This document shows, one piece after another, positions 1,279-63,185 of a DNA stretch of 64,000 nucleotides (within the stretch, counting starts at the first letter, position 1; each line of letters starts with the position of its first letter). Made by a program: the position numbers and the translations under genes. The stretch is from positions 62,001-126,000 of the IMG/VR virus record IMGVR_UViG_3300043409_000928; one strand, written 5' to 3'. Below the pieces are notes generated by a model that was given only the letters and a program-made list of their open reading frames with translations, was not told the DNA's origin and made no database searches.

Positions 1279-1475
1279 CAATTATTCCCCCATCGCAATG
1301 CAGTTATTGCGGCATCATCTCTATTGTTAAAATCAAATATCATATAGTTTTCGTTTAGTTCTGTTTTATACTTGCCACCTGGAAGACCAAATTCTTCTAT
1401 CACCCAGGCACATACATGGTTCCACCACTCTGTGGTATCCTGGCCTATTTTCCAACTTAGTTTGACTTTATACAC
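1278..1475 (-). CDS. Hypothetical protein, 65 aa
   Basis: Overlaps both primase and helicase, suggesting translational coupling. No motif recognised. Confidence 0.6.
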   Translation of the reverse strand: MYKVKLSWKIGQDTTEWWNHVCAWVIEEFGLPGGKYKTELNENYMIFDFNNRDDAAITALRWGNN

Positions 1476-2436: not shown

Positions 2437-2448
2437 ATAGAGTTTAGT

Positions 2449-3249: not shown

Positions 3250-3295
3250 AACAGTATTTAGCAACGACCGGATCTTTAAAATGCTAAGTAAAGCA

Positions 3296-3673
3296 ATGAT
3301 GGATAGTAAAATCAAAGAATTTTTAGAGCGTTTCCCGTTTATGAGCTTGGTTCGGTACGGCGAAACCGAATTGGTAGGTATTATACAAAATAGTGACCAA
3401 ACAGTGGTCACTATGTATGTCTACAACTTATTAAAAGACGGTGACGATAAAACATTATTCATTGAATGTGGAGAAGAATGGTGGTGGGGCAGTAATAGAC
3501 TAATTCCCATCAACATTGTACTAAAGGCACCCATGCGTACATTCTTGTATGCATTAAAAACATACAGTTCAAAAGATTTTGAAGTTCTGCATGGGAACTT
3601 AACCAGCCTTACCAATGTCATTACTAAACGTACAAAAAGACGTCAAATTAGCCTTATAAGAAAGCTAGATTAA
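3296..3673 (+). CDS. Hypothetical late protein, 125 aa
   Basis: ATG at 3296 (MMDSKIKE) lies 5 nt after TAAGTA. Divergent from the 3249 gene. Confidence 0.65.
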   Translation: MMDSKIKEFLERFPFMSLVRYGETELVGIIQNSDQTVVTMYVYNLLKDGDDKTLFIECGEEWWWGSNRLIPINIVLKAPMRTFLYALKTYSSKDFEVLHGNLTSLTNVITKRTKRRQISLIRKLD

Positions 3674-4539
3674 TTTAAGTTTAAGTAGTCACTGGTACTA
3701 TTGTTATCAACCCACAGGTGCTGTGTATCTTTGTATTTTGCAATACTTCTATCTAACAGATCGACATATTGATTTACCTGGTGATTAGTAATTAATTTAC
3801 CTCTCCAAATAAACAATACTTTCATCCCTTTGGCACTCATGAGACTTCTGTGTTTGGTTCTTAAGTTATTCCAAGCAAATGAATTTGTTTCAGCAAGTTG
3901 TGGTATAGCAATGTACTTGTTTGTGTGTTGCTTAATTGGATCTGTTAACAAGTAAAGAGTTTCGCTGGCATTGTTGTCAAATAATTTAACTCGCATTGAC
4001 AATGGTGCATCAATTAGACTAGTACGGTCGCGATGTGGTATTATATCAGCGGCACTGGACCACATGTTCCATGCAAAATCTTTATCACCTACCCAAGGCA
4101 TGTAGTCGTGTATTTGCTCAAAAATTTCAGGGAATTCGGTGTAGGTTTTCTCCAATGCATTTAAAGACCAAATTGGATTCCATCCTGGCGTTACGCTGTC
4201 TATGCTCCTATAAGTTCGATCTGTTTCCGCAACTGTGGCGCTGGCAAAATCAGCCTGAGCCTTGCTTGCATGTTGTGCATTGTTATTAAAATAAAGAATA
4301 AATTTTTCAATGTCATTGATTTTAATACTAGGAATATTGTATGGAACAAACAAGTACTTGCCATATGTTTGTTCAAGCTTGGAGTGAAGGCCAATGACTT
4401 CGGGTAGTAAGCTCAACTCGTGTTTACGAAGCTTGGTTAAATTTTCCTTGGTCTCGGTTACAGCGCCACCTACTTTACGTTCTACGTTTTGTTCGGTGTA
4501 CACTGTTTGATTATCATTGCTCCTGATCATACTTGTCAA
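3670..4539 (-). CDS. Hypothetical protein, possible cupin/2OG-Fe(II) oxygenase fold
   Basis: 289 aa, ATGA overlap with the mini-DnaE stop. HxD (IIPHRD) and a distal His (WNNLRTKHRS). Confidence 0.5.
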   Translation of the reverse strand: MTSMIRSNDNQTVYTEQNVERKVGGAVTETKENLTKLRKHELSLLPEVIGLHSKLEQTYGKYLFVPYNIPSIKINDIEKFILYFNNNAQHASKAQADFASATVAETDRTYRSIDSVTPGWNPIWSLNALEKTYTEFPEIFEQIHDYMPWVGDKDFAWNMWSSAADIIPHRDRTSLIDAPLSMRVKLFDNNASETLYLLTDPIKQHTNKYIAIPQLAETNSFAWNNLRTKHRSLMSAKGMKVLFIWRGKLITNHQVNQYVDLLDRSIAKYKDTQHLWVDNNSTSDYLNLN

Positions 4540-5120
4540 GTATACCCATAACTGATTTGTTCACAAATTAAATTCATTTGTGCAACAATGGCAACTGCAT
4601 ACGCAGTGGCGTGACTTTTCTTAAAGAAGTATTCATCGTTCTTGGGCTTCGTCCAAACTTCGTTCATAATCGTCGTCCATGGCTTCCCAATCAGATAGCG
4701 TTTCGCGGGACGGATCATTGCTAGGACCGCAGATAATTGTTCCACTGAAGTCGGCTGGGTCCTCCGGAGAATATCGCCATGCCCGTTCAAATGAAATAAC
4801 AGATTTACAAAGTCGTTGTCTTGTAATAGATCCCATAATGGCTCCTGGTTGGCTAGTTGATCCAAATGTTCTTTGCTTTTTACCTTTTGGTACAAGCTTA
4901 CATTCAATAAGTCTACTTTAAAAAATCCTAGTTCTTCTGCTTTTTTATAATCAACATCGCACCATCCGGTAAATGGATTGGCTGGTACTGGATGAAAGTA
5001 CACTCCAGTTTTATGCTTTTGCTGTTGATTATTGGCAATCTGCATTGCTGGCGTGTGTGGCAATAGATTAAGAATTGCTTCTCTATTGGCAAAGTCAATG
5101 TCTACGTCGGGATGATTCAC
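4536..5120 (-). CDS. Miniature DNA polymerase III alpha (DnaE)-like protein, 194 aa
   Basis: DnaE motifs in the correct order: PDVDIDF, KHKTGVYF, FFKVDLLNV, QPTSVEQLSAVLAMIRP, YFFKKSHATAYA. Confidence 0.85.
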   Translation of the reverse strand: MNHPDVDIDFANREAILNLLPHTPAMQIANNQQQKHKTGVYFHPVPANPFTGWCDVDYKKAEELGFFKVDLLNVSLYQKVKSKEHLDQLANQEPLWDLLQDNDFVNLLFHLNGHGDILRRTQPTSVEQLSAVLAMIRPAKRYLIGKPWTTIMNEVWTKPKNDEYFFKKSHATAYAVAIVAQMNLICEQISYGYT

Positions 5121-5320
5121 TTTTTAAGTTTCTCTTTAAACATAGTAGTCAGCTGACTCTGTTGTGTTTTAATTTGATTCATTTCTGCATAGAGCATGTC
5201 AAGCTTTTTTATAAATTCAAGCAATCGCAGTTCTAGAGATTCGTATCTAGCGCCTGCATCATCATTGTGTTGATCCACAGTACTTCGTTCGGTTCTTTTT
5301 TTAATTTCTTTATCCACCAT
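5117..5320 (-). CDS. Small coiled-coil hypothetical protein, start uncertain
   Basis: Fills the gap up to the mini-DnaE (GTGA overlap) but overlaps the upstream gene by 88 bp. Confidence 0.4.
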   Translation of the reverse strand: MVDKEIKKRTERSTVDQHNDDAGARYESLELRLLEFIKKLDMLYAEMNQIKTQQSQLTTMFKEKLKK

Positions 5321-5925
5321 TCAGTTTCCACATGTTTTGCTACCGTATCAATTTGAGCTGGTTCCATTCTATCTAATAGATTCTGTGCCGCTTCAGTGGA
5401 GTAAATGATCCATGGACTTAATCTGCCCATAACTACCATATTCATTCCTGTTGCAGGCGGAATCTTATTAAAGAAATCTCTCCAATTGTTTCCGGTTTTC
5501 TCACCCCACTCGCGCATAGTGAGAATTGTTCTTTCAAGTGCTCTATCTGCCGTTTCTTTTTTTGCGGCTTCCTGAACATACAACTGATAAGTGCCGGGCT
5601 TTTGCCAATCACTTAATTTCACTCCCATTTTAAAAAGCCAGTTAATAAACTTGTCACTTTCGTATGGGCGAAGTTCTATCAAATAGTTAGCAAATTTTAT
5701 AAATGCAATGTAATCAAAACTCCTTATAAAATCATCAACTGTCTTTGTTTTTTTAGCGTTTGGACTAACATAGCTAATAAAGTCTGTCCACACTCTAAAA
5801 CCAATTCTGCTGTCTATGTCATCCTTGTTCATCCACCGCCTTTTCTTTTCACACATGTGGTTACTAAGTGTACTTTCGCGGCTAAAGGACTTTAAACAAA
5901 ATTTACATTGATGTTGTTGTGACAT
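5233..5925 (-). CDS. Hypothetical protein with N-terminal zinc finger
   Basis: CKFCLKSFSRESTLSNHMC fits C-x2-C-x3-F-x5-L-x2-H-x-C. Confidence 0.75.
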   Translation of the reverse strand: MSQQHQCKFCLKSFSRESTLSNHMCEKKRRWMNKDDIDSRIGFRVWTDFISYVSPNAKKTKTVDDFIRSFDYIAFIKFANYLIELRPYESDKFINWLFKMGVKLSDWQKPGTYQLYVQEAAKKETADRALERTILTMREWGEKTGNNWRDFFNKIPPATGMNMVVMGRLSPWIIYSTEAAQNLLDRMEPAQIDTVAKHVETEWWIKKLKKEPNEVLWINTMMMQALDTNL

Positions 5926-6420
5926 TTATTTAAACAATTCTTTAAATTCTTTATTACCCATGTTTTGTGAAGTTGCTATTTCAGCTAATACTTCTGGGCC
6001 ATTTATTTCTCGGAACAGTTCAATTTCATCATTGCTCATTGCTGGAAACTTCTCAATGAGCCATGCTGTTAGCTTGTCTTTCTTTGCACCGCCAATTGGT
6101 GGAATAAATTCATGTCTAAGTTTAACGCCCAGTCCAACCAGTGCCAGGGCCTTCCATCGAAGTTCTTCATGTTCACTTGTGGTGGCAATGTAATCAATGT
6201 TGCTGTAGTTGTTTACATCTATTAGATACTGTTCCTGTACATCTCTAGTACCTTGTACTTGACTGGCCCAACGCTGTGCCATAAAAGTGTTTACCCCTTT
6301 TTTATCCTCATCAGATAACTTTGTGTAATAATCACCTTTACGCAGATCCACTGCCGCCATCAATTGGTCAATGGGAACTTTGTATACAGCAGATGCTGGT
6401 GCTTTCTTTTTGGTAGCCAT
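5926..6420 (-). CDS. Probable clamp-loader small subunit, gp62-like
   Basis: YYTKLSDEDKKGVNTFMAQRWAS resembles the gp62 family. Size and replication-operon context fit. Confidence 0.5.
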   Translation of the reverse strand: MATKKKAPASAVYKVPIDQLMAAVDLRKGDYYTKLSDEDKKGVNTFMAQRWASQVQGTRDVQEQYLIDVNNYSNIDYIATTSEHEELRWKALALVGLGVKLRHEFIPPIGGAKKDKLTAWLIEKFPAMSNDEIELFREINGPEVLAEIATSQNMGNKEFKELFK

Positions 6421-6429
6421 ACTGTTATT

Positions 6430-6936
6430 TTAAAACCAAATCTTGTTTAAGTCAAGCACTTCTGGAATTTTATTTGTTTCTTTTAAAAAGAAAGCACAAA
6501 CTGGTTCTTTTTTATGTTCTAAAGGAACTGCCAACACATGCCCAAACTTTAGCTTGGGCACATACCATTTTACTTCTTGGTAGATGTTGACTATTTCAAC
6601 CTTCATCCATTCGGGCTTGTAGCCGTTGATGGGATTAAAGACAAACGTGCTGAACCCACGGTCATTTAAACTCATTACATTGATAACTTCTGGCTCTCCG
6701 TGATCGGGTTCTCCAATAATCAGTGACCAATCTAATGGCACTTTGAGTTCATGACTTCCTATACGCAATACTGCCGCAGGACAACTGAAGCTTTCTAAGA
6801 AAACAAGTGGTACAAACATATAGTCAACATCAGCAGGATTGCTGTAGTCAAGTACCCCGTAGCGCAAGTCTTCATCAATTTCTTCTGGTAAACGATCTAA
6901 ATCGTATGACAGATTATCAACTGTTAATATTCTCAT
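6430..6936 (-). CDS. Hypothetical protein, possibly a degenerate Hint-like beta fold
   Basis: 168 aa, coupled to uvsW. Fold guess from the hydrophobic pattern only. Confidence 0.6.
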   Translation of the reverse strand: MRILTVDNLSYDLDRLPEEIDEDLRYGVLDYSNPADVDYMFVPLVFLESFSCPAAVLRIGSHELKVPLDWSLIIGEPDHGEPEVINVMSLNDRGFSTFVFNPINGYKPEWMKVEIVNIYQEVKWYVPKLKFGHVLAVPLEHKKEPVCAFFLKETNKIPEVLDLNKIWF

Positions 6937-8390
6937 TTATAAATTACCTTTTCAGTTTGATATGGATAGTTTGCTTCTTCATAAAATTTCTTGCGCTTGG
7001 CCAAGTGTCTTTTGGCAAACTTTGCTGTGCTTGTTATGTCCCATATCTGGACAAAGTCTTTGTCTTCTGCTTTTCTAATACCTCGGCCAATGCTCTGTAT
7101 AACCCTGACAAAACTCTTTCCAGGCTCCACTAGAACCAAGTTAAAGATCCTAGGTATATTAATACCCACAGAGGCCACACCATACGTGGCCACAATGATT
7201 TTATTTGTTGCAAGAGTAACTTCATCATACTCTTCTTTTCTATCCTTTGATTTCATGGACCCTGATACAAATACGCTTTCTGGTAAACGCTCAACCAGCA
7301 TCTTACCCGAAGCAATACGATCGACCAATACCAAAGTATTTCCACTTTGACTAATTGCATCAATGGTCTTGGCCAGTTCATCAATCCTGCGTTCATTGCT
7401 GGTCAGATATGTTAATTCTTCTTGATATGTTTTGTATTCAACTTTATCATCAAATTGCAATACCTTTACATGGCAGTTACTCAATACACCAATGTCCTGT
7501 AGTTCACTGGCCTGTAATCTATGTAGGACATTGCCCAATGATGCTGTTAGACTGATATATTCATGTTCTTCTTTGGGTATGGTACCTGTTAACCCCCAAC
7601 GAATTGGAACATTTGCAAACGGGCCCGTCAACATTGTTTTAAGTACATCAGCCTTGGCCATGTGTACTTCGTCAACAATTACTGCAATCAGGTCATCCGT
7701 AATTGCTTCAATGCCAATTGCACTGGTTCCTTCTTTGCTTCGTTTGATTAAGGAGTTGATACTTTGCCATGTTGCAATGGTATGTGTATGCCCAAGATCT
7801 TTCTCGTCACCAAAGTATACACCAACATCTAATCCCATGTTGACATAGTCTGCATGTGTCTGCCGCACTAGATCCTTGTTGGGTACAATAACAACTGTGC
7901 GGCCATACGGTTCACACGTAAGACTCATGGCCGCTGTCATTAATGTCTTGCCAGCACCTGTTGCAATCTCTTGAACACCATGCGGATTAGCAAGGAAGCG
8001 ATTGATACACTCTACTTGGTAATCGCGAATCTTAATAGGCTGGCCTTCTGCTACGTGTCCTTTGGGCCAAAGTATGTGACTAAAGGTGTCCTCGGTAACT
8101 TCAGCAAAATTGAAATTGTGCGCGGTCCGCTTGTCTTCAATTTCAATTTGCCAACCTTCCTCATCTATAATGGGCAATACTCGTTCTAATAGATTTAGAT
8201 AGGTCGACCCTGCGGTGGTAAAGAAGCTGATCTTACCATCCCATCTTCCTAGCCTAAAGGCCGGCACATGATAAGCATATGGTAATTGATATTTTAGTTT
8301 GGCTTCGCATCGTCTGCGTGTTGAAGCATCTAAGTCGTGAAACTTGACATTTACTTCATCTTTGATTTCTAATCGGCATATTCCAGGCAT
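6933..8390 (-). CDS. uvsW: UvsW-like SF2 DNA helicase
   Basis: IRDYQ, ATGAGKT, DEVH, LTGT, QSIGRGIR. Confidence 0.92.
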   Translation of the reverse strand: MPGICRLEIKDEVNVKFHDLDASTRRRCEAKLKYQLPYAYHVPAFRLGRWDGKISFFTTAGSTYLNLLERVLPIIDEEGWQIEIEDKRTAHNFNFAEVTEDTFSHILWPKGHVAEGQPIKIRDYQVECINRFLANPHGVQEIATGAGKTLMTAAMSLTCEPYGRTVVIVPNKDLVRQTHADYVNMGLDVGVYFGDEKDLGHTHTIATWQSINSLIKRSKEGTSAIGIEAITDDLIAVIVDEVHMAKADVLKTMLTGPFANVPIRWGLTGTIPKEEHEYISLTASLGNVLHRLQASELQDIGVLSNCHVKVLQFDDKVEYKTYQEELTYLTSNERRIDELAKTIDAISQSGNTLVLVDRIASGKMLVERLPESVFVSGSMKSKDRKEEYDEVTLATNKIIVATYGVASVGINIPRIFNLVLVEPGKSFVRVIQSIGRGIRKAEDKDFVQIWDITSTAKFAKRHLAKRKKFYEEANYPYQTEKVIYK

Positions 8391-8395
8391 AAAGT

Positions 8396-8424
8396 ATTAT
8401 AACAGGTGTAAGGGGTAATGTCTA
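8396..8424 (-). promoter_or_regulatory. sigma70 promoter of uvsW, leaderless
   Basis: TAGACA-17-TATAAT with TGn extension. ATG follows the -10 after 5 nt. Confidence 0.8.
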
Positions 8425-8469
8425 TTCGTATGTTACCGTTATGGCAATACATGTATCAATGAGGCTAGA

Positions 8470-8475
8470 TACTTA
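8470..8475 (-). promoter_or_regulatory. Late promoter motif TAAGTA upstream of uvsW
   Basis: Intergenic match to the recurring TAA(A/G)TA motif. Confidence 0.5.
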
Positions 8476-8515
8476 GTGCAAAATCACTGGTTTTAAAAAG
8501 CAATTTGTCCATAAT

Positions 8516-8542
8516 CAAAAGAAAAGGCTCCGTAGAGCCTTC
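8516..8542 (-). terminator. Rho-independent terminator of the DUF4214 gene
   Basis: AAGGCTC-4 nt-GAGCCTT followed by TTCTTTT on the minus strand. Confidence 0.8.
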
Positions 8543-8557
8543 CTTAAATCGAGTAGA

Positions 8558-9457
8558 TTACAAGACTACTGGAGTATACTCAATGCCGGTAGTAGCAAGA
8601 CCAACCAGTCCAATTGTGGTTTCAAATGCTGGCAACTCACTGGCGGCAACTAGCACATCAGCTTGTGACAAATTGCCATTGCTCATCCATGCTGTGTAGT
8701 CTGTGACTTGTGCCAATGTTGCATCAGTGCCAAATACATTTTTGTAAACATGCTTGATGAATGTTTCATTGCTGACGCCACCTGCATCTGTTTTGTAAAC
8801 ATCCGTGGCCAACAACGCTTGGGCCAATTGTTTGTTGGTCCATCCTGCATCAGCTAGACCAATTCCAATTCCTTTATATGCGTTAGTAACATCAGCAGTA
8901 CCAAGTGCGGCTGACAACAATGCATATACATCACCTGCACGACCTGCGGCATCATAGGCAATGGCCTTGTCTGTGAACACCACACGCTCGTGATCAGCAA
9001 GGTTAAATTCCACATTGGTGGCCAATGTGCTGTCTAATTCAATTTTACCAGCAGTCTTGGCAACGGTGTATTCGGTACTTGCACCACCGACCGTATAAGT
9101 GTCAACACCTGCGGTGCCAGTAACATCAACTGTGATATCAACTGTGCCGTCACCTGCACGACCTGTACCTACTACACCAAATGTAGCAATCTTACCTGCT
9201 GTGCCAACTGTGGCCACTGTGACGATTAGGTTGTTGGCCGCTGTTCCACCTAGTGCTGTACCAGCAAGAGTGATAGTGTCACCTGCAACATAGCCCGAAC
9301 CTGAGCTGGCCGCAAGTGAGTCAAGGACCACAGAATATGTTCCGTTGGTCTTTGTAACATCAAATATGGCTCCGTCTCCTGTGCCACCTGTTAAACCTGT
9401 AACATTTTGGTAAGTTGTGTTTACCGGTTTGTCTTTGATTGTAATTGTCGTTGTCAT
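8558..9457 (-). CDS. DUF4214-domain (S-layer/secreted-protein-like) protein, 299 aa
   Basis: C-terminal DHERVVFTDKAIAYD...AGDVYALLSAALG...SNETFIKHVYKNVFG pattern. G/T-rich N-terminal beta domain (GSGYVAGDTITLAG). Confidence 0.75.
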   Translation of the reverse strand: MTTTITIKDKPVNTTYQNVTGLTGGTGDGAIFDVTKTNGTYSVVLDSLAASSGSGYVAGDTITLAGTALGGTAANNLIVTVATVGTAGKIATFGVVGTGRAGDGTVDITVDVTGTAGVDTYTVGGASTEYTVAKTAGKIELDSTLATNVEFNLADHERVVFTDKAIAYDAAGRAGDVYALLSAALGTADVTNAYKGIGIGLADAGWTNKQLAQALLATDVYKTDAGGVSNETFIKHVYKNVFGTDATLAQVTDYTAWMSNGNLSQADVLVAASELPAFETTIGLVGLATTGIEYTPVVL

Positions 9458-9525
9458 AATTTTCCTTTATAGTATGATTTATAAACAAACTGTTTATGTT
9501 ACTATTGTACATGAATTTAATTACA

Positions 9526-9551
9526 AAACATGTGCGTGTACGCACATGTTT
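9526..9551. repeat. Perfect 12-bp inverted repeat, operator-like
   Basis: AAACATGTGCGT-GT-ACGCACATGTTT. Confidence 0.8.
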
Positions 9552-9576
9552 GACACGATTGTCCAGAATATATTGC

Positions 9577-9603
9577 CAAAAGAAAAGGCTCCTAAGAGCC
9601 TTC
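9577..9603 (-). terminator. Rho-independent terminator of the RNA ligase gene
   Basis: 25 of 27 nt identical to the 8516-8542 terminator. Confidence 0.8.
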
Positions 9604-9651
9604 TCCCCACCGACCACATTCCACGCAAATAGTCAGCTGTCGGTGTCGAAC

Positions 9652-10698
9652 TTAGTCCTTGCTTTTCAACAAGAATCTGTTGCTGATTGCCTTAAAGGAT
9701 TGATCAAGTGAGTGTGCCTTAAGCACAATGCCTTCTCTTTCCGTTTGAGCATTAAGGTTACTTTTGCCTTCTGCAAATTTCAACATGTTGGCAATGGTCA
9801 CAATGCCCAGTGAGTCATACAGTTCGGCACTATATGCTAGTACAGGTACATGCATCAGCTGGTACAGCTCACAAAACTCATTTCGTTCTACTGGATTGAA
9901 ATAGCGTTTGGCATCTATGTCATAAATGTCAAAAGTGTAAAAACTTTGACCTTTAATTTTGTAAGGATTCCCCTGAATGCCTTCGCCTACAATTTCACCT
10001 TGTACAGCAAGATTGCGACCGCTTTCGATAATGGCCGTGATGATCTGATCACGGTGTGCCACTTTCCAAAGTGTATTGCCTTCTGTGTCCTTTAGATTTA
10101 GGTTACGGCTACATACTCCATGATCATCACCATTGACATACACTGTCATTGACGAACCATCCAGCTTCTCGGTAACTTCCCAATTGACTCGGTCAGCCTG
10201 CCATTGTGCAAACTCTGTGCTTAGGTTTTGAACACGCTCTTGGTCTGTCTTTGGAATAAATGTTGGGAACAGACCACGCACTTCGCCTGCCAAGTGTGCT
10301 GGCACAGGTGGATCGTATTTTACGATGCCTAAAATTTCAGTGACATCAAACGGTTCATCAGATGCCAAGCGAGTCTTATGAAATGCCTCTACCACTTTGG
10401 GAAAATCCCAGTACCTAAGAAGCAAGCCTTGGCTTAATTGGCCGCGAAGTTTTACTGTACGCAGACGCTCACCTGGAATGCCATCGTATACTCGAGGCTC
10501 TTGACCTTTGCTGAGGAACGGGGCAAGTGCTGTGGGAATCCAACTGTCAATTTCACAATAGACAGCCACGTCTCCCACTTTGAATTCATCCTTTTTAATG
10601 ACCACAGTCCAGCCACCAACCACTGCACATTCAATTGCGTCAGCATCTGGGATTGCCCGGATTTCGTCAATCGTTCTCATGGTTGCTAGTTTACGCAT
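9652..10698 (-). CDS. RNA ligase, Rnl2/DRB0094-like with N-terminal OB-like domain
   Basis: Nucleotidyltransferase motifs EKLDGSS, QGE, FDIY, EGIV, FKAISNRFL. Confidence 0.88.
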   Translation of the reverse strand: MRKLATMRTIDEIRAIPDADAIECAVVGGWTVVIKKDEFKVGDVAVYCEIDSWIPTALAPFLSKGQEPRVYDGIPGERLRTVKLRGQLSQGLLLRYWDFPKVVEAFHKTRLASDEPFDVTEILGIVKYDPPVPAHLAGEVRGLFPTFIPKTDQERVQNLSTEFAQWQADRVNWEVTEKLDGSSMTVYVNGDDHGVCSRNLNLKDTEGNTLWKVAHRDQIITAIIESGRNLAVQGEIVGEGIQGNPYKIKGQSFYTFDIYDIDAKRYFNPVERNEFCELYQLMHVPVLAYSAELYDSLGIVTIANMLKFAEGKSNLNAQTEREGIVLKAHSLDQSFKAISNRFLLKSKD

Positions 10699-10746
10699 AT
10701 CATATTCCTAAATACGGGAGGCATTGCCTCCCGGTAACTTCAGCTA

Positions 10747-11805
10747 TTATTCTGCTCGCTTCATTACAGTAGTTTCTGCAAGACGCTTCCAACGATCGCC
10801 AGCACCTGACATCTTCTTCAAGTCTGCAATCTTAATAACACTACGCAAGCTCAACTCGCGCAAGCGATCCTTGTTAGTGTCAACATACTCATAAATTTCT
10901 TTAGTAGCACCTTCTTCAAAATCATACGCATCCAACATACCATCCATGGTGATCTGTTTGATACGCAACATTTTGTCGCGGGTGGTATCCATTGTCAAGT
11001 CCAGATAGTGACAACGGCTCTCCAATGCTGTCAAGTGATCCTTGAGTTTGGCAGACCTGACATGCTCAAACTTAATGTTGGTAATGAAAATTGCACTGCC
11101 TTTAAAGTCAAACTTGTCTGGCACACCTTCTGAACGCAACATGCGGCTGTCAGTGTTCCAGCTGATAGTGCGCTTCTTGCTAGTATCCAAAGCGGCTTTC
11201 AAAATGTTCAAGCTCAAGTCGTCAAGCAAGATGCTGTCACAGTCGTCAAACACCAGCACATTGCCTTCGTCGCTGTACTGATACAGTTTGCAATACAAAC
11301 CAATGGCGCTCATTGCACCTTTGACCACTTCGTAGCGAGGACGAGTGCCGCCAATCTTGTCAAACATTGCGGCCTTGTTGAGAACTTTCTCAACGCCAAA
11401 GCTCTTACCCACGCCCGGAGGGCCAACAACAATCATTGCACGGACTGAGCCGTCGACTGCGCCTTCTGTCATTTCTTCCAAAATGTCAAAACGCTCACGA
11501 ATACGGGTAATTGCTTCTTGGTCTGTTTCTAATTGCATTGGCTTTTCTTTGCGCTTGGGTGCATCGTAGTTAGCTTCAATGCTGGTTGTGGCGCAATCCG
11601 CGGCACTGGCTGGCTCAACGTCACGCATGGATGCCACTTTAATACGCACCTCACGACCAGCAAACTCGCCAAGGCTTTCGTCACCTAGTACAGTAACATA
11701 GCCACCTTTGGTGCCTTCTTTGTAATCTGCAATCAACTGGAAAGTCTGATTGTTAATGTTGAAGCTACGGTAGGTACCGTTCTTGATAGTAATGTATGCT
11801 GACAT
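10747..11805 (-). CDS. Early AAA+ ATPase, 352 aa
   Basis: Walker A GPPGVGKS, Walker B VLVFDDCD. Start reassigned to MSAYI at 11805, preceded by SD AAGGA. Confidence 0.85.
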   Translation of the reverse strand: MSAYITIKNGTYRSFNINNQTFQLIADYKEGTKGGYVTVLGDESLGEFAGREVRIKVASMRDVEPASAADCATTSIEANYDAPKRKEKPMQLETDQEAITRIRERFDILEEMTEGAVDGSVRAMIVVGPPGVGKSFGVEKVLNKAAMFDKIGGTRPRYEVVKGAMSAIGLYCKLYQYSDEGNVLVFDDCDSILLDDLSLNILKAALDTSKKRTISWNTDSRMLRSEGVPDKFDFKGSAIFITNIKFEHVRSAKLKDHLTALESRCHYLDLTMDTTRDKMLRIKQITMDGMLDAYDFEEGATKEIYEYVDTNKDRLRELSLRSVIKIADLKKMSGAGDRWKRLAETTVMKRAE

Positions 11806-57926: not shown

Positions 57927-57963
57927 TAAATAGATTATGAAAGTAGGCCTACGAACCTATTTA
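57927..57963. promoter_or_regulatory. Face-to-face late promoters for gp26-like (+, 57927-57932) and tape measure (-, 57958-57963)
   Basis: TAAATA present on both strands. Confidence 0.6.
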
Positions 57964-57981
57964 CCGTTAAGGATTAAGTAC

Positions 57982-58875
57982 ATGGATAACCAAAACCCAC
58001 TAAAAAAGCCGTTTAAGGCAGTGACACCAAACCCGTTGGCAGGGTATTACCGCCGCCCTGGCACATACATTGAACTTCCTTCAAAAGGAAGATTTTATAA
58101 GCTTCCACCCAAGGTTTCAGACACAAACGAATTGGCAATCTATCCAATGACTGCCAAAGATGAATTGGCATTAAAAAATCCAGATTCGTTATTAAACGGT
58201 GAAGCGTTAAAGCAGGTAATACAAAGTGTTTGTCCAGATATCAGGAATGTCAACGAAATTCCTGCCCCGGACATTGATGCTATCTTAGTGGCCATGCGTA
58301 TGGCCAGCTATGGTGATGACATGGAATTGAATGTCACACACGGATGCAATGAAAGCGAAGGGAAGAGCCAACGAATTACCATTGGACTAGGCGGAGTTCT
58401 TTCTACTCTTAAAGAAATTCCAGAAGGTGTAGGCTCAGTTACACTTAGTACCGGTGTACGAGTTGAATTAAGACCGTATACGTTAGAATCACAAAGTAAG
58501 CTTCTTCGCATTCAATTTACAACAATGCGACAGTTGCAGGCCATGGAAGCAAACGAAACTTCAACAGTTGATCAAAAAGCAGAAGTTGCTACCAATGGAT
58601 ACAATGTGTTGGTTGATCTAAGTCAAGAAATACTTGCACAAAGTATCATTTCAGTAACATTACCAGATGAAACTGAAGTAACTAACTATTCACATATTTT
58701 TGAATGGGTTAAGAATTTAGATCGTGCAAGCAATGAACGATTAGATGTAGAGCTAAAAAGATTTGGCGAGTTTGGTATTACTCGAACAGTTAAAATAAAG
58801 TGTGATTACTGCAATGAGGATTACACATCAGATATGTTGTTTGACCCCACAAGTTTTTTCGCCAACGGCTCTTGA
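57982..58875 (+). CDS. Baseplate hub assembly chaperone, gp26-like
   Basis: YIELPSKG, YPMTAKDE, PDIDAILVAMR, CDYC, ends SFF. Start at 57982 with SD AAGGA. Confidence 0.75.
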   Translation: MDNQNPLKKPFKAVTPNPLAGYYRRPGTYIELPSKGRFYKLPPKVSDTNELAIYPMTAKDELALKNPDSLLNGEALKQVIQSVCPDIRNVNEIPAPDIDAILVAMRMASYGDDMELNVTHGCNESEGKSQRITIGLGGVLSTLKEIPEGVGSVTLSTGVRVELRPYTLESQSKLLRIQFTTMRQLQAMEANETSTVDQKAEVATNGYNVLVDLSQEILAQSIISVTLPDETEVTNYSHIFEWVKNLDRASNERLDVELKRFGEFGITRTVKIKCDYCNEDYTSDMLFDPTSFFANGS

Positions 58876-59099
58876 TGTTTGGAGTTGATAGAGTAAAGAT
58901 TAGAAACTTTATTGACGCAATCGAATCAGATGCAAGAGCCTTAATCAAAGAAGTATCTACACTAAGCATCTGGGGACCAGTGGATCCAGAATCAATCTGG
59001 AATATGACATATCTTGAAAGACTTGTTCTTAGTGAAGCAATAAAAGAGAAGACAGAAACAATGTATGGGAAAAAAGGTATTGCTCGTAGTCGGATGTAA
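58872..59099 (+). CDS. gp51-like hub assembly protein, possibly the -1 frameshift extension of gp26-like
   Basis: IWNMTYLERLVL resembles the gp51 LENMxPWER pattern. No SD. Confidence 0.6.
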   Translation: MMFGVDRVKIRNFIDAIESDARALIKEVSTLSIWGPVDPESIWNMTYLERLVLSEAIKEKTETMYGKKGIARSRM

Positions 59100-59229
59100 C
59101 TTGTTATATCTTGGTAGAGCGAATACTTCGCTCTTGAATTTCGTATCGCTTCGCTCTACTCATTCATCTTGTATTATATAGAGTAGTTAAAGTAATTATA
59201 GTGGATTATAGTGAATCACATTTGATAAC

Positions 59230-59640
59230 ATTTTGATTACTTGACACTGATGCTTCAGTCACACTTAGCCCTGTTAAGGACTAAGAGAAAACTTGACACC
59301 GAAGTTCAAGCCACATTCAACTAAAGAAACTTGTTAAAGTAAGGGCGGTCACGCTGTACCCTTTTACACTCATCTTATATGACGCTACCGTATTGACCTA
59401 GTTGAAATCGTCGATACAGCATGTAGGTTGTAATAGTTCACCAGAGCCTACTCATTTTAGCTTTCGTATACTAATCCCAGTTCTTTTCAAGCAATTGAAC
59501 TTCGTCCTGTGAAGGATAGTGGGCGTTAGTCTCTGCTACTGCACAGAATTTCCTTCCCCAGCGCAACCCTAGTGCCTGGTTTTATGGGTGTCTAATTATA
59601 TCGGTGACACTGACCTATCAGTAGTGATCTTGTCGTTGTG
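59230..59640 (-). ncRNA. Candidate large structured RNA, boundaries approximate
   Basis: No ORF of 60 aa or more across 660 bp, and at least 7 predicted helices including a cUUCGg tetraloop on the minus strand. Confidence 0.5.
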
Positions 59641-59757
59641 AGTTTGCTAATTGAATTTGCGAAATCGCTGTGAGTGTCTACATTGCGTAGTAAATTAGCC
59701 AGGATGAGTTATTGTACACTTTAATTATCAAATGAGCCAGGTGAGTTATAGCCGTTG

Positions 59758-60186
59758 TTACAGCTTGTTTATTATGTGTGAGCCATGTACACGAACACTA
59801 ATTTGTCCATTGTAATAATCTGTCGATTCCAATACTTTTCTATCAAATTGTTCTTTGGCCTCTATGTAAGAGCATACTGCCTTTGAATTACAGTAATGTA
59901 GAATCTCTCTAATAAAGTTATCTCTACCAAGAGATTCTACATCTTTGTTCAACTGATCGTTGCTACCGTAGTATTCTTTCCAGTCTGAGTCAATCTTAGA
60001 ACGAATACGCTTTTTCTTCTTGACTCCATTTTTCTGTTTGACCACTTTATAGGTAGTCTTGGAAAATTTTGCTAACTTTTTGCCAATATACATCCGATGG
60101 TCAGTTTTATTTGTTATAAGATAAACAAAACCAACGCATTCTTCAGGAAGTACATCTACCACAGTACCTTGATACAGCCAAGTCAT
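59758..60186 (-). CDS. Stand-alone GIY-YIG endonuclease domain, 142 aa
   Basis: GFVY-x9-YIG, EAKE, YYNG. Basic insert KVVKQKNGVKKKKRIR. Confidence 0.85.
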   Translation of the reverse strand: MTWLYQGTVVDVLPEECVGFVYLITNKTDHRMYIGKKLAKFSKTTYKVVKQKNGVKKKKRIRSKIDSDWKEYYGSNDQLNKDVESLGRDNFIREILHYCNSKAVCSYIEAKEQFDRKVLESTDYYNGQISVRVHGSHIINKL

Positions 60187-60377
60187 TACTTGGGAGTTGA
60201 CAGGGCTTCTTTCTCGGCTGTAATCTCTTTACGGCGTTCTTTGATTGCTTTGCTCATTTCTTGCAGAGCCTTACGAGCTCGAGCGGCCGCGGCCTTTACA
60301 CCCTTGCCTGAGAACTTTTCGTTTTCAGCTTTATAATTTTCAAATTGTTCTAAAAGTGTTTCATGATTTGTTGACAT
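60186..60377 (-). CDS. Histone H1-like (Hc1-type) small basic protein
   Basis: KGVKAAAARARKAL motif. Start at 60377 with SD AAGGAG. Confidence 0.6.
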   Translation of the reverse strand: MSTNHETLLEQFENYKAENEKFSGKGVKAAAARARKALQEMSKAIKERRKEITAEKEALSTPK

Positions 60378-60387
60378 TACAGTCTCC

Positions 60388-62166
60388 TTAGTTAATTTCA
60401 TTCACTTGTGTATCTGTGTCAAGCATGGTAAATCCACTTTCTTTGACTACCAAAAGTACATTGTTGACTCGACTTGCTAACTCGTCTCTATGCGAGATTA
60501 AGAAAATATTTCGATTCATTTCTCTACCCATGGATTTTAAGATTGACATTGAACATTCAATACCAACCTGATCCATACCTGAATCCACCAACTCATCAAT
60601 AAACAACAAGTTCATTGGTTCAGTAAAGCTCTCATACACATCTCTAAAACTCCAGCTTAGTGCTAGAATTAATCGATTCCGTTCGCCCCTACTCAAGTTA
60701 TCAAAATCAAAGCTTTGACCCAGTTGGTTGATATCAACTTCTAAATCGCTTCTAAAAGAAACTTGATGCGGCAATTGTAACTTATCCAAGTAATAACCCA
60801 ATCTGTGATTCAAATACGCTAAATTCTGTTCAATAATGCGTTTTCGGACAAATGAGTCTTTGCTTGTAAGTAACTTGAGCAAGAATTCTTGATGTTCAAG
60901 CAGTTTACTTACCCTGTTAATTTCATCCCAGCTAACCTCTGCAAGCGCAGTATTTTTAAGAGCTTCAATTTGTTCCTGATAAGGATCTTCTTCTTGGTCT
61001 TTTGCTTCTAGTTGTTTTCGAATGTTTTCTAGATTATTTTTATGTGCCGCGGCATCCTCTACATTTTGATATTTGGTCTGAGGTCTTGCCGGCAATTGAT
61101 TAATAGTACGCACTACCATGTCAGCCTGCGCCAAATAGCCATGTTCTTCTTTTAATGCAGTATCAGTTACTTTAACAGTATTGGTTGCAGATGCAACCAT
61201 TTCATCGTGCTTCTCGTCATGTACATCTTGCCCACAACTGGGACATTGATGTTCTTCGATTAAAGACAAGCTTCGTTGTGCTGACACAAGTGCATCTTGC
61301 AATTTCTTAACATTGCTTTGTCTTGTTGCCAATTCTTTATTGGCTAACTTTAGGCGATTTTCGTTTTCCTTATAAACAGCAAGGGCTCGATGAGAATCAA
61401 GTTCCAAATCAATATCAGTGTTTTCTAATTCAGTGATAGCAGATACATAGGCAGTAAGATCATCTGTTTTCTTTTTGACCCACGTTCGCGAACGGCGTTG
61501 CAAATCTTCTACAGTTGTTTGTACTCTGACATTGCTTTCTTGTAAAGCTTTGATTCGTGCTTCCTCATCGCGCACTTGCTCTTTACTATTTTTAATTTGT
61601 TCTCGTAGTAACTCAGCCTTTTCACTCAACTGAGTAATGCCAAGCAGTTCTTCGATGATGTCTCTTTGATCGTTTGATTTCAAACTTAAAAACGGTTGTG
61701 TATATGTGTTTAGTGCAACCAGATGTTTGAACATCTCGCTACTCATGCCAATAATGCGACCAATTGCTTCTTGTGTGACTCTATTCTCACCAGCACCTTC
61801 ATCTGTACCAGCTTCGTTGACTTCATGATCGTCAACAATAAAACGTAACAGGTTAGGCTTGCGACCACGCTCAATCCTATACTTGTTGCCGTTCTTTTCA
61901 AATTCAACTGTGACCAACATGTTATTAATGTTGGTCTTATTGATCAAGTTTTCTTTGCGAATGTTGGTAAGAGCTGATCCAAAGATAGCATAGCTGAGTG
62001 CGTTAACAATGGTGGTCTTACCTACACCGTTTCTAGCACCGTCGCCGCCTAAGTCTAAGTTATGCCCTAACACAAGAGTCAATCCATACTGATCCAGTAG
62101 AAGGGCCTGGGTAACATTACCCACGCTCATGAAGTTTTTGATTGTTATATTTTTAAACTTGATCAA
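60388..62166 (-). CDS. gp46: Recombination endonuclease ATPase subunit, gp46/SbcC-like
   Basis: NGVGKT, Zn hook CPSC, LSRGE, LFIDE, ISH. Confidence 0.93.
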   Translation of the reverse strand: MIKFKNITIKNFMSVGNVTQALLLDQYGLTLVLGHNLDLGGDGARNGVGKTTIVNALSYAIFGSALTNIRKENLINKTNINNMLVTVEFEKNGNKYRIERGRKPNLLRFIVDDHEVNEAGTDEGAGENRVTQEAIGRIIGMSSEMFKHLVALNTYTQPFLSLKSNDQRDIIEELLGITQLSEKAELLREQIKNSKEQVRDEEARIKALQESNVRVQTTVEDLQRRSRTWVKKKTDDLTAYVSAITELENTDIDLELDSHRALAVYKENENRLKLANKELATRQSNVKKLQDALVSAQRSLSLIEEHQCPSCGQDVHDEKHDEMVASATNTVKVTDTALKEEHGYLAQADMVVRTINQLPARPQTKYQNVEDAAAHKNNLENIRKQLEAKDQEEDPYQEQIEALKNTALAEVSWDEINRVSKLLEHQEFLLKLLTSKDSFVRKRIIEQNLAYLNHRLGYYLDKLQLPHQVSFRSDLEVDINQLGQSFDFDNLSRGERNRLILALSWSFRDVYESFTEPMNLLFIDELVDSGMDQVGIECSMSILKSMGREMNRNIFLISHRDELASRVNNVLLVVKESGFTMLDTDTQVNEIN

Positions 62167-63185
62167 TGTGTAAGTCCTTGATAGATATGTGCCAGTATTT
62201 GCTTATCAATTTGAGCAGAGTCAATTGCTTGTATCTGATTTAATACAATAGCATCAACTGATTCAAACTGTAGTTCGCCACCCTTCCATTCAGTTGAGTG
62301 TTCTTCTTTCTTGGTTGGCATTAGACTAAGCTCTCGCATTCCATATTCGTTGACCCATTTTTCTTTAATATAGGTTGCTTCTTCAAACGAAATATCAACA
62401 TCAATTGTAACACGGGCAAAAGTATGTTCATCAAACAAACTCTCATGTTTATCAATTGCATCTGTTAGTGTTAGTGTTCTAAATTTTGGGGCACTGGGCC
62501 AGTTTTGGAATTCTGGTTGACCACCATATTCTAAAAACATGCAACCACGCTCGTCATCCCACGCATCGGCGTAGTTGTGCGGGAAACAATTTCCCATGTA
62601 TACAACATTACCTCGCTTTTGTCGTTTATGAAAGTGTCCAGAAAATACAAGCTCTTGGTTGGGAAAGTGTCCTTCGTTCAATCCGCCATGGTCTGGCATT
62701 TCTACCATGGCATTCATTTTAAAATGTGGAAGTTCAAAGTGTCCAAATACATAACGACTCTTTAACTTTTTCATGTTCTCCCATTCACTGCCAACAAGCC
62801 AAGGAACAATTGTCATATCACCGATGGTTGTAATCTCATCAATCAAGTTAACATTGCTCAAGTGTCTAGCAAACGGGAGTGAGTTGATTTCACGCTTCTC
62901 TCTATATGCCAAATCATGGTTACCCATAATAATGTATACCTGCTCAAAGTTTTCTGAAAGGTACTTGACATTTGAAGTAGTGTAGTTGAGTGTGCTCACA
63001 TTCACAGTGGATCTGTTGTTGTGCCAATCGCCAAGGAAGATGCAAGTTTCAGCACCTGCTCGTTTGGCTTCTTGGGTCATCCATTTTATAAAGTTCTCAC
63101 AATCATCATTGTGAGCTCTACTGTTGTTTCTTAAGCCAAAATGAATATCTGTAAAGCACACAGCTTTTTTAAAAGGTTGAGTCAT
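62163..63185 (-). CDS. gp47: Recombination endonuclease nuclease subunit, gp47/SbcD-like
   Basis: DIH, GDW, GNHD, GHFE, SGHFH. Confidence 0.93.
   Translation of the reverse strand: MTQPFKKAVCFTDIHFGLRNNSRAHNDDCENFIKWMTQEAKRAGAETCIFLGDWHNNRSTVNVSTLNYTTSNVKYLSENFEQVYIIMGNHDLAYREKREINSLPFARHLSNVNLIDEITTIGDMTIVPWLVGSEWENMKKLKSRYVFGHFELPHFKMNAMVEMPDHGGLNEGHFPNQELVFSGHFHKRQKRGNVVYMGNCFPHNYADAWDDERGCMFLEYGGQPEFQNWPSAPKFRTLTLTDAIDKHESLFDEHTFARVTIDVDISFEEATYIKEKWVNEYGMRELSLMPTKKEEHSTEWKGGELQFESVDAIVLNQIQAIDSAQIDKQILAHIYQGLTH

What the first reader, a model, noticed from the sequence alone, without database searches (positions are those of the whole stretch)
59100..60186. Stand-alone GIY-YIG nuclease followed by a ~400-500 nt multi-helix non-coding element: candidate nuclease-RNA system
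Seen: 59100-59757 is by far the longest non-coding gap in a tightly packed genome, and it begins at the GIY-YIG stop codon on the same strand. On the minus strand it can form a run of helices: CUG-GG-GAAGGA/UCCUUC-A-CAG (about 59490-59560); GUAGG/CCUAC (59423-59451); GCUGUAUCGAC/GUCAAUACGGU (59387-59420); AAGGG/CCCUU (59341-59363); GGCUUGA-AC(UUCG)GU-G-UCAAGUU with a cUUCGg tetraloop (59290-59312); CUUAGUCC/GGGCUAAG (59264-59285); and UGAC-UGA hairpin (59242-59261). Several helices need G-U pairs that work only on this strand. The 142-aa protein is just the catalytic GIY-YIG core plus a very basic insert (KVVKQKNGVKKKKRIRSK). Known: GIY-YIG homing enzymes such as I-TevI need appended DNA-recognition domains, which are missing here. 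Inference: the RNA may supply the specificity or scaffold, giving an RNP nuclease or an intron-derived ribozyme partner. The alternative is an unrelated phage ncRNA that merely sits downstream.
Basis: partly seen in the sequence, partly recalled or inferred. Interest (0 to 1): 0.85.

Follow-up and report, generated by a model that had tools for sequence, protein, structure and literature searches.

The report
Large orphan RNA beside phage nuclease
The long gap after a small phage nuclease gene holds a roughly 510-base folded RNA from a catalogued family of unknown function (Polynucleobacter-1); the RNA is about three times longer than its database model and also occurs without the nuclease, so it is probably an independent RNA gene and not the nuclease's guide.

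Summary
The gap 59100-59757 is the longest in the window and is filled, on the minus strand, by a conserved structured RNA. Its 5' third (59615-59470) matches Rfam RF01718, Polynucleobacter-1 RNA, at 88 bits against a threshold of 37. That family was described in 2010 as lying downstream of a gene family related to cyanophage gene PSSM2_218. I show that PSSM2_218 is this GIY-YIG protein family.

New here:
- The element runs from about 59624 to 59116.
- It has two covarying pseudoknots, about 13 supported helices, two 3' hairpins and an unexplained covarying direct repeat.

In about 150 uncultured freshwater T4-like phage contigs the RNA follows the last gene of an SbcD-SbcC-(histone-like)-nuclease operon, often starting within a few bases of the stop codon.

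Four results argue against a nuclease-RNA particle:
- In ten contigs an unrelated PD-(D/E)XK nuclease occupies the slot.
- One phage carries the RNA in a tRNA/tmRNA cluster.
- 29 betaproteobacterial genomes carry the RNA in integrase-bearing islands with no such nuclease.
- The GIY-YIG family occurs in 422 phage records; three representative loci were scanned and carry no RNA.

The nuclease-RNA particle idea is therefore unlikely but not excluded. The RNA's function remains unknown.

The parts
59758..60186 (-). 142-aa stand-alone GIY-YIG nuclease gene (PF19835 / phrog_447). It is the last protein gene of the SbcD-SbcC-Hc1-nuclease operon, and its start overlaps the stop of the upstream gene.
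59116..59624 (-). The whole conserved RNA element, about 510 nt: 5' pseudoknot strand, Rfam core, 3' domains, a loosely conserved linker and two terminal hairpins.
59619..59624 (-). 5' strand of pseudoknot PK1 (CUACUG). It pairs with the loop CAGUAG at 59536-59541 and lies outside the Rfam model.
   Evidence: 100% paired, 2 compensatory pairs; about ten different covarying versions across the family.
59470..59615 (-). Match to Rfam RF01718 Polynucleobacter-1 RNA (helices P1-P6).
   Evidence: 88.3 bits, gathering score 37, model 1-141
59341..59451 (-). Middle domain: hairpins P7 (59451-59423) and P8 (59421-59386); pseudoknot PK2 (GUCA 59383-59380 with UGAC 59351-59348), which crosses hairpin P10 (59363-59341).
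   Evidence: 92.9% of cells paired against 72% in shuffles and 35-47% when slid..
59239..59340 (-). 3' domain: P11 (59340-59329), doubtful UUCG hairpin (59311-59291), covarying hairpin P13 (59285-59264), and two copies of the direct repeat GUGUCAAGU (59299-59291 and 59247-59239).
59167..59238 (-). A/U-rich linker. It is poorly conserved and lies at a breakpoint between a conserved upstream module and a more divergent structural-gene module.
59116..59166 (-). Two terminal hairpins: T1 (59166-59135, loop with the GAGCG..AGCGAA motif) and T2 (59134-59116). They are conserved in phage and bacterial copies and may form the 3' end or a terminator, though no U tract follows.
59692..59747 (-). Spacer between the stop codon and the RNA, holding two copies of an 18-19-nt repeat (AACTCA(T)CCTGGCT.ATTT). 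It is found only in the closest relatives; most relatives have no spacer.
60186..63185 (-). Upstream genes of the same operon: Hc1 histone-like (60186-60401), SbcC-like ATPase (60388-62166) and SbcD-like phosphoesterase (62163-63185).
57937..59099 (+). Convergent genes that end at the RNA's 3' side: a T4_baseplate-family protein (57937-58875) and a 75-aa ORF (58872-59099).

Best explanation
The gap encodes a full-length member of the Polynucleobacter-1 RNA family. This is a complex RNA of about 400-510 nt carried by mobile elements of freshwater Betaproteobacteria and by uncultured T4-like phages.

In this phage the RNA is the last unit of the SbcD-SbcC-Hc1-nuclease operon. It is most likely made by read-through transcription and then processed into a stable RNA (inferred). 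It acts on its own, or with a host factor, and not as a partner of the GIY-YIG protein (inferred).

The GIY-YIG protein is a separate, self-sufficient small DNA nuclease of the recombination operon. A PD-(D/E)XK nuclease can replace it (inferred).

Shown: family membership, extent, folds, strand, synteny and distribution. Inferred: co-transcription, processing, independence from the nuclease. What the RNA does is unknown. My best guess is that it binds a host-clade-specific factor, or is a self-contained RNA machine like other large orphan RNAs of phages.
For: - Rfam RF01718 scores 88.3 bits here and 63-115 bits in relatives.
- The 2010 description puts the motif downstream of a family related to PSSM2_218. 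PSSM2_218 is 38% identical to this protein, E 8e-19.
- Covariation supports P1, P3, P4, P6-P8, P10, P11, P13, T1, T2 and two pseudoknots.
- 29 bacterial loci carry the RNA but no GIY-YIG, PD-(D/E)XK or SbcCD gene. There it sits in a divergent promoter region next to a DUF6641 gene, inside islands with integrases beside tRNA genes.
- In phage locus L175 the RNA lies among about 20 tRNA genes and a permuted tmRNA, with no nuclease.
- Ten contigs have PF24608 PDDEXK_15 (phrog_244, annotated as a RusA-like resolvase) in the GIY-YIG slot. For two of them (L269, L306) the RNA was compared and is 64-65% identical to the window's, within the 58-98% seen for GIY-associated copies.
- GIY-YIG homologues occur in 422 phage records. 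Melnitz (53% identical), Variovorax phage V45v66 and S-SRM01 have no Rfam match within 4 kb. The basic insert is conserved in those RNA-less homologues.
- L046, L047 and L061 keep a 72%-identical GIY-YIG with no RNA within 3 kb.
Against: - In 69 of 104 phage loci the nuclease ORF ends 90-119 nt before the scan motif. That is about where the RNA's 5' pseudoknot strand begins. This arrangement recalls guide RNAs that abut their nuclease gene.
- Whenever the upstream gene could be seen in these T4-like phages it was a small catalytic-domain-only nuclease (about 143 GIY-YIG, 10 PD-(D/E)XK).
- In about half of the bacterial loci a 188-aa catalytic-domain-only tyrosine recombinase follows the RNA.
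- GIY-YIG loci that lack an Rfam match often carry a diverged or domain-swapped version of the RNA.
- No expression data were available. No function has been shown for any member of the family.
- My RNA-first scans used sequence patterns taken from this lineage, so the census of contexts is biased.
Confidence: 0.62

Rival explanations
1. Nuclease-RNA particle. The RNA is a scaffold or specificity module for interchangeable catalytic-domain-only DNA enzymes: GIY-YIG or PD-(D/E)XK in phages, and a 188-aa tyrosine recombinase in bacterial islands.
For: - The nuclease-then-RNA order is constant, and the RNA often starts at the stop codon.
- All three adjacent enzymes lack DNA-recognition domains.
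- The covarying direct repeat and a lysine/arginine-rich beta-hairpin predicted in the GIY-YIG protein (residues 40-66) could be contact or guide elements.
Against: - No protein is shared by all contexts. The bacterial loci have none of the nucleases, and the recombinase is present in only 14 of 29.
- L175 has no such enzyme.
- The RNA is not remodelled when the nuclease fold is swapped.
- The basic insert is also present in homologues that lack the RNA.
- The repeat word has no other copy or complement in the 64-kb window.
Confidence: 0.1
2. Cis-acting 3' end of the operon mRNA. The structure protects the transcript from 3' exonucleases, terminates convergent transcription, or tunes expression of the last gene. 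A ribosome stopping at the stop codon would cover the 5' pseudoknot strand.
For: - The RNA lies at the end of the operon, facing convergent genes.
- The terminal GC-rich hairpins T1 and T2 are conserved.
- The stop codon abuts the PK1 strand in most relatives.
Against: - Some 400 nt with two pseudoknots and invariant loops is far more than a 3' stabiliser needs.
- In bacteria the RNA stands alone, divergent from its neighbour, with its own promoter-like region.
- In the window a 130-nt spacer separates it from the gene, and in seven loci about 800 nt are inserted.
- No intrinsic-terminator match was found.
Confidence: 0.13
3. The small nuclease genes are selfish, homing-type genes lodged next to an ultra-conserved RNA gene that serves as their target or safe landing site. 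From my own knowledge, SegB in the T4 tRNA cluster is such a case.
For: - Two unrelated nuclease families occupy the same slot.
- Extra ORFs are sometimes inserted there.
- The Pfam family is named after the T4 homing enzyme SegE.
- The RNA has long invariant blocks.
Against: - GIY-YIG is almost universal in the lineage, and its divergence tracks SbcC and SbcD (50-99% against 46-95%), which indicates vertical descent and not sporadic invasion.
- It has no DNA-binding domain.
- The family is widespread in T4-like cyanophage records, at other genome positions in the loci I examined.
Confidence: 0.08
4. A degenerate group I intron, or another known ribozyme, tied to a GIY-YIG homing gene.
For: From my own knowledge, GIY-YIG genes sit in phage group I introns such as the T4 td intron with I-TevI. 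The RNA is of similar size.
Against: - No Rfam intron or ribozyme family matched, even at E up to 10.
- There are no split host-gene exons: the upstream gene ends normally and the downstream genes are convergent.
- The nuclease gene is translationally coupled to the operon and is not in an intron loop.
- The same RNA is free-standing in bacteria.
Confidence: 0.01

Closest known systems
Rfam RF01718, Polynucleobacter-1 RNA motif (Weinberg et al. 2010, PMC2864571)
   Same: The window matches the full 141-position model at 88 bits. It has the same helices, the same freshwater/Burkholderiales setting, and the same location downstream of the gene family related to PSSM2_218.
   Different: - The model covers only 59615-59470.
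- The conserved element also has a 5' pseudoknot strand, about 230 nt of further covarying structure with a second pseudoknot, a covarying direct repeat and two terminal hairpins.
- The 2010 paper found it in no purified phage. Here it is in a 285-kb T4-like phage contig and about 150 related contigs.
- The flanking gene is identified here as a GIY-YIG nuclease.
OMEGA systems: TnpB or IscB with omega RNA (HEARO RNA)
   Same: A structured RNA of a few hundred nt abuts a small nuclease gene on the same strand. The RNA's 5' end lies at the end of the ORF. This comparison rests on my own knowledge.
   Different: - The nuclease folds differ: GIY-YIG or PD-(D/E)XK here, not RuvC or HNH.
- I looked for transposon ends or an IS context and saw none.
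- No evident guide segment was found.
- RNA and nuclease each occur widely without the other.
Large orphan ncRNAs of phages and prophages (GOLLD, ROOL)
   Same: Hundreds of nucleotides, many helices and pseudoknots, carried by mobile elements, sometimes next to tRNA genes (L175), function unknown. This comparison rests on my own knowledge.
   Different: No sequence or model match to those families. The host range differs (freshwater Betaproteobacteria and their phages). The usual position is at the end of a recombination-nuclease operon.
T4 free-standing Seg homing endonucleases (SegE; SegB in the tRNA cluster)
   Same: The GIY-YIG catalytic domain belongs to the SegE Pfam family, and the gene sits beside a structured RNA gene.
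   Different: There is no C-terminal DNA-binding domain; the protein is 142 aa. Seg proteins are about 200 aa or more by my own knowledge. It is inherited vertically across the lineage.
T4 endonuclease II (DenA), a stand-alone GIY-YIG nuclease of about 136 aa
   Same: By my own knowledge it is a small GIY-YIG enzyme of a T4-like phage that works without an added recognition domain. In phage Melnitz the homologue lies just after the ribonucleotide reductase genes.
   Different: No sequence match to the solved structure. No significant Foldseek match of the predicted model to any PDB chain. Homology to DenA is therefore not shown.

Membership tests
Rfam RF01718 Polynucleobacter-1 RNA | Covariance-model score above the curated gathering score over the full model | tested here: met
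   88.3 bits against 37, model positions 1-141, E 1.8e-17
Rfam RF01718 Polynucleobacter-1 RNA | Consensus helices kept with compensatory changes in relatives | tested here: met
   P1, P3, P4 and P6 are 86-100% paired with 1-5 compensatory pairs each. P2 is only 66% paired because subgroups differ.
Rfam RF01718 Polynucleobacter-1 RNA | Genomic context reported by its authors: downstream of the gene family related to P-SSM2 gene PSSM2_218 | tested here: met
   PSSM2_218 is 38% identical to the window's GIY-YIG protein, E 8e-19.
GIY-YIG nuclease superfamily (PF19835 SegE_GIY-YIG) | Profile match, and the catalytic Tyr, Tyr/Gly, Arg, Glu and Asn present | tested here: met
   E 7e-32. Y22, Y33, G35, E94 and N126 are invariant and R62 invariant or nearly so.
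Homing endonuclease of the Seg / I-TevI type | Separate DNA-binding domain joined to the catalytic domain | tested here: not met
   The Pfam domain covers residues 3-129 of 142. The predicted tail 123-134 is disordered.
Homing endonuclease of the Seg / I-TevI type | Sporadic presence among close relatives | tested here: not met
   Present in nearly all of about 150 related contigs, with divergence parallel to SbcC and SbcD.
RNA-guided nuclease system (OMEGA-like) | Obligate co-occurrence of the RNA and its nuclease | tested here: not met
   The RNA occurs without the nuclease in 29 bacterial loci and in L175. The nuclease occurs without the RNA in Melnitz, Variovorax phage V45v66, S-SRM01, L046, L047 and L061, with another gene directly downstream in P-SSM2.
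RNA-guided nuclease system (OMEGA-like) | A variable guide segment attached to a conserved scaffold | tested here: inconclusive
   A 7-9-nt word varies between lineages but is kept identical in two copies. It has no other match in the window. The variable linker is explained by a module breakpoint.
RNA-guided nuclease system (OMEGA-like) | Physical RNA-protein complex and RNA-dependent cleavage | not testable with these tools
   Needs biochemistry.
Group I intron | Match to the intron model, and flanking exons of a split gene | tested here: not met
   No Rfam match up to E 10 in 58900-60300. The neighbouring genes are complete and convergent.
tRNA / tmRNA | Detected by ARAGORN or by the Rfam tRNA and tmRNA models | tested here: not met
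   No tRNA or tmRNA anywhere in the window.

The most novel reading that the evidence does not exclude
The Polynucleobacter-1 RNA is a shared, portable specificity or scaffold module for several unrelated catalytic-domain-only DNA enzymes: GIY-YIG or PD-(D/E)XK nucleases in T4-like phages, and a 188-aa tyrosine recombinase in bacterial islands. The twin covarying 7-9-nt words would act as paired guide or contact segments. This would be a new class of RNA-directed DNA enzymes.
Probability: 0.07. Interest if true: 0.95.

Novelty: new member of a known kind. Interest (0 to 1): 0.5.

Why it matters
Large, intricately folded bacterial and phage RNAs of unknown function are rare, and earlier ones have led to new biology. 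This work adds the following:
- An RNA catalogued since 2010 as a 141-nt 'sRNA motif' is really an element of about 400-510 nt with two pseudoknots.
- It is shared by uncultured freshwater T4-like phages and by integrative islands of Polynucleobacter, Limnohabitans and related bacteria.
- Cultured Polynucleobacter strains carry it, so it can be studied at the bench.
- The 'small nuclease then RNA' order, the swap of nuclease fold in that slot, and a direct repeat whose two copies covary are concrete puzzles that experiments could settle.
- For the scan itself, the attractive 'RNA-guided GIY-YIG' reading should be ranked low.

Tried and rejected
- Group I intron or other known ribozyme or riboswitch: no Rfam family other than RF01718, even at E up to 10.
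- tRNA or tmRNA: none in the window.
- Sigma-70 promoter or intrinsic terminator in the gap on the minus strand: none found.
- Cultured phage carrying the RNA: blastn of the window copy, a majority-type copy and a bacterial-type copy against 50,697 phage records found nothing.
- Homology of the protein to T4 endonuclease II or any solved structure: sequence search gave only 3r3p at E 0.064. The AlphaFold model (pLDDT 83) had no Foldseek match in the PDB below E 0.3.
- My covariance model R1, built on the majority phage group, was too narrow. It scored window-type copies at 20-31 bits and missed the window and the bacterial copies. I therefore used MAFFT alignments of subfamilies and my own pair counts.
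- RNAalifold on the 3' domain found only P10 and P13, so the repeat-bearing segments have no simple nested fold.
- A crude complementarity test for PK1 was noisy: 67% of true pairs against 34% of cross pairs had runs of 5 or more. The case for PK1 rests on the listed covarying variants and.
- 'Hypervariable guide-like linker': rejected, because the downstream genes are also only about 70% identical in otherwise near-identical contigs, so the linker lies at a recombination breakpoint.
- Same-strand genes that follow the RNA in some contigs have no Pfam match.
- There is no literature on DUF6641, PF24608 or PF19835 in the searchable library.

Full report
WHAT IS THERE

The window is part of a 285-kb uncultured T4-like phage contig, IMGVR_UViG_3300043409_000928. 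With ORFs of 70 aa or more, the stretch 59100-59757 is the longest unoccupied region; the next is about 320 nt. It is bounded by two stop codons: that of a minus-strand 142-aa gene (59758-60186) and that of a convergent plus-strand gene (58872-59099).

The 142-aa protein is a complete PF19835 SegE_GIY-YIG domain and nothing else (E 7e-32, residues 3-129). It also matches phrog_447. The catalytic residues are conserved. It closes an operon of SbcD-like, SbcC-like and Hc1 histone-like genes.

IDENTITY OF THE RNA

Rfam places 59615-59470 (minus strand) in RF01718, Polynucleobacter-1 RNA, at 88.3 bits against a gathering score of 37. Nothing else matches, even at E 10.

The 2010 description (PMC2864571, supplement) reports three things: the motif is mostly downstream of genes related to PSSM2_218 of cyanophage P-SSM2; its 3' half is not always detected; and it was not seen in any purified phage. 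PSSM2_218 is 38% identical to the window's GIY-YIG protein, E 8e-19. The nuclease-then-RNA association was therefore already on record, although the gene had not been recognised as a nuclease.

TRUE EXTENT AND FOLD

Iterative nhmmer on 80 loci that encode relatives of the protein shows conservation well beyond the Rfam model, from about 59620 to 59240. The original Rfam seed flanks, including the Polynucleobacter genome copy, contain the same 3' blocks.

In 48 diverged phage copies the middle domain is 92.9% paired. Column shuffles give 72% and slid partners give 35-47%. All 12 pairs of P8 are compensatory, and a pseudoknot covaries cleanly (U-A 29 / C-G 19; G-C 34 / A-U 13; U-A 32 / G-C 9 / A-U 4).

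On 28 window-type copies I counted pairs for each helix in window coordinates. A 5' pseudoknot joins 59624-59619 to the P3 loop at 59541-59536. Across the family it appears in about ten covarying versions, for example CUACCG/CGGUAG, UUCAG/CUGAA, AACGG/CCGUU and ACACCAA/UUGGUGU.

Two terminal hairpins at 59166-59116, with a GAGCG..AGCGAA loop motif, are conserved in phage and bacterial copies. The element is therefore about 510 nt, running from 59624 to 59116.

AN UNEXPLAINED FEATURE

A 7-9-nt word occurs twice, 50-75 nt apart, on either side of hairpin P13. The first copy follows CUC and the second follows UCU. The word differs between lineages. At the four variable positions the two copies are identical in 43/43, 43/43, 39/39 and 32/33 sequences.

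In the window the word is GUGUCAAGU, at 59299-59291 and 59247-59239, and it has no other copy or complement in the 64 kb. RNAalifold finds no nested fold that explains it.

DISTRIBUTION

I ran three kinds of search:
- A protein-first search: 71 of 80 related loci have the RNA downstream on the same strand.
- Two RNA-first pattern scans of IMG/VR, which gave 117 and 45 further true loci.
- A scan of bacterial genomes (described below).

All but one of the phage loci show SbcD-SbcC-(Hc1)-nuclease-RNA facing a convergent baseplate gene. In 69 of 104 loci the nuclease ORF ends 90-119 nt before the scan motif. That is about where the 5' pseudoknot strand begins, and in the two cases I read by eye it begins directly after the stop codon. 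The window's 130-nt spacer with its tandem repeat is the exception.

In ten contigs the slot holds a 173-188-aa PF24608 PDDEXK_15 protein (phrog_244, annotated as a RusA-like resolvase) and not GIY-YIG. In the two of these that I aligned (L269, L306) the RNA is not remodelled: it is 64-65% identical to the window's, within the 58-98% seen for GIY-associated copies.

Some GIY-YIG loci have no Rfam match but carry a diverged RNA, or one with the same 3' domain and a different 5' domain. Three loci have no RNA within 3 kb.

Outside this lineage:
- The protein family is in 422 phage records, 287 of them Synechococcus phages.
- The three loci I scanned (Melnitz at 53% identity, Variovorax phage V45v66, S-SRM01) have no Rfam match. 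In P-SSM2 another gene follows directly.
- Conversely, phage locus L175 has the RNA among about 20 tRNA genes and a permuted tmRNA, with no recognisable nuclease gene beside it.
- 29 genomes of Polynucleobacter, Limnohabitans and related Burkholderiales have the RNA (80-94 bits in the six scanned with Rfam) with none of the phage genes.
- In those genomes the RNA is divergent from a DUF6641 gene in 25 of 29 loci, and a 188-aa tyrosine recombinase follows it in 14.
- In those loci it lies in islands with a full-size integrase, which in two of them sits next to a tRNA gene.

INTERPRETATION

No protein partner is common to all contexts. The RNA survives a swap of nuclease fold. Each of the RNA and the nuclease occurs widely without the other. 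The most economical reading is two separate things.

The first is a small self-sufficient DNA nuclease that belongs with the SbcCD recombination genes. Its replacement by a resolvase-like PD-(D/E)XK enzyme fits a DNA-processing role.

The second is an autonomous, complex RNA gene parked at the end of that operon. It is probably transcribed by read-through and then processed.

What the RNA does is unknown. Its complexity, its carriage by mobile elements of one host clade, and its placement among tRNA and tmRNA genes in one phage suggest a stable trans-acting RNA that engages a host factor or acts as an RNA machine.

The tight abutment to small catalytic-only DNA enzymes keeps a ribonucleoprotein reading alive at low probability. 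A cis 3'-end role and a 'selfish nuclease beside a conserved RNA target' reading are further minor rivals.

LIMITS

- No expression data were available.
- The pattern scans are biased towards relatives of this lineage.
- The full-length RNA exceeds the size limit for covariance models here, so some pair counts come from my own scripts on MAFFT alignments.
- The PK1 variant list was read by eye.
- The AlphaFold model of the protein (pLDDT 83; a long basic beta-hairpin at residues 40-66) found no PDB neighbour.

Noticed in passing
window 59291-59299 and 59239-59247 (minus strand); alignment A4 columns 61-67 and 124-130: A 7-9-nt word occurs twice, flanking hairpin P13. It varies between lineages, yet the two copies stay identical in nearly every sequence (43/43, 43/43, 39/39, 32/33 at the variable positions). 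This is direct-repeat covariation, not complementary covariation, and it is unexplained.
   Followed up: partly
L099, L103, L134, L136, L165, L269, L292, L297, L304, L306 (gene just upstream of the RNA, e.g. L103:3963-4484): A 173-188-aa PF24608 PDDEXK_15 protein (phrog_244, 'RusA-like Holliday junction resolvase') replaces the GIY-YIG gene in exactly the same slot between the Hc1/SbcC genes and the RNA.
   Followed up: partly
L175 (IMG/VR contig), about 1000-11200: A different phage carries the Polynucleobacter-1 RNA (9381-9527) inside an array of about 20 tRNA genes plus a permuted tmRNA (about 10790-11190), all on one strand. A kinase-like gene (phrog_15752) lies next to it.
   Followed up: partly
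L205-L263, e.g. L245:3626-6398, L243:1571-7756: In Polynucleobacter, Limnohabitans and related genomes the RNA sits in integrative islands. A DUF6641 gene is divergent upstream (25 of 29 loci). A 188-aa catalytic-domain-only tyrosine recombinase lies about 250 nt downstream (14 loci). Then come two unknown genes, an AAA ATPase and a 424-aa integrase; the integrase lies beside a tRNA gene in L228 and L258.
   Followed up: partly
L053:1114-1560, L082:3418-3850; L050:1974-2400, L029, L038: Variant RNAs follow the GIY-YIG gene. L053 and L082 keep the 3' domain (ACCGCC block, P13, repeat word) but have an unrelated 5' domain. L050, L029 and L038 carry a diverged relative that Rfam's model misses. 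The family looks modular and wider than RF01718.
   Followed up: no
window 59692-59710 and 59730-59747 (minus strand): A tandem 18-19-nt repeat, AACTCA(T)CCTGGCT.ATTT, lies in the spacer between the nuclease stop codon and the RNA. It occurs nowhere else in the window and is present only in the closest relatives. It may be a promoter or a protein-binding site.
   Followed up: partly
window 60183-60190: The Hc1 histone-like gene (60186-60401, PF07432) and the GIY-YIG gene overlap in the sequence TAATG, which suggests translational coupling. A chlamydial-type histone-like protein in a T4-like phage recombination operon is unusual.
   Followed up: no
L271, L278, L280, L305, L308 compared with window 57937-59240: Contigs whose GIY-YIG (99-100%) and RNA (about 98%) are near-identical to the window's have downstream structural genes only about 70% identical. 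A recombination breakpoint therefore lies at the RNA's 3' linker.
   Followed up: partly
RNA loci L093, L147, L153, L158, L180 and others, starting 325-420 nt after the scan motif: In about 35 contigs a variable same-strand gene of 270-570 aa with no Pfam match follows directly after the RNA's 3' domain. The RNA's 3' side appears to be an insertion hot spot for unknown cargo genes.
   Followed up: partly
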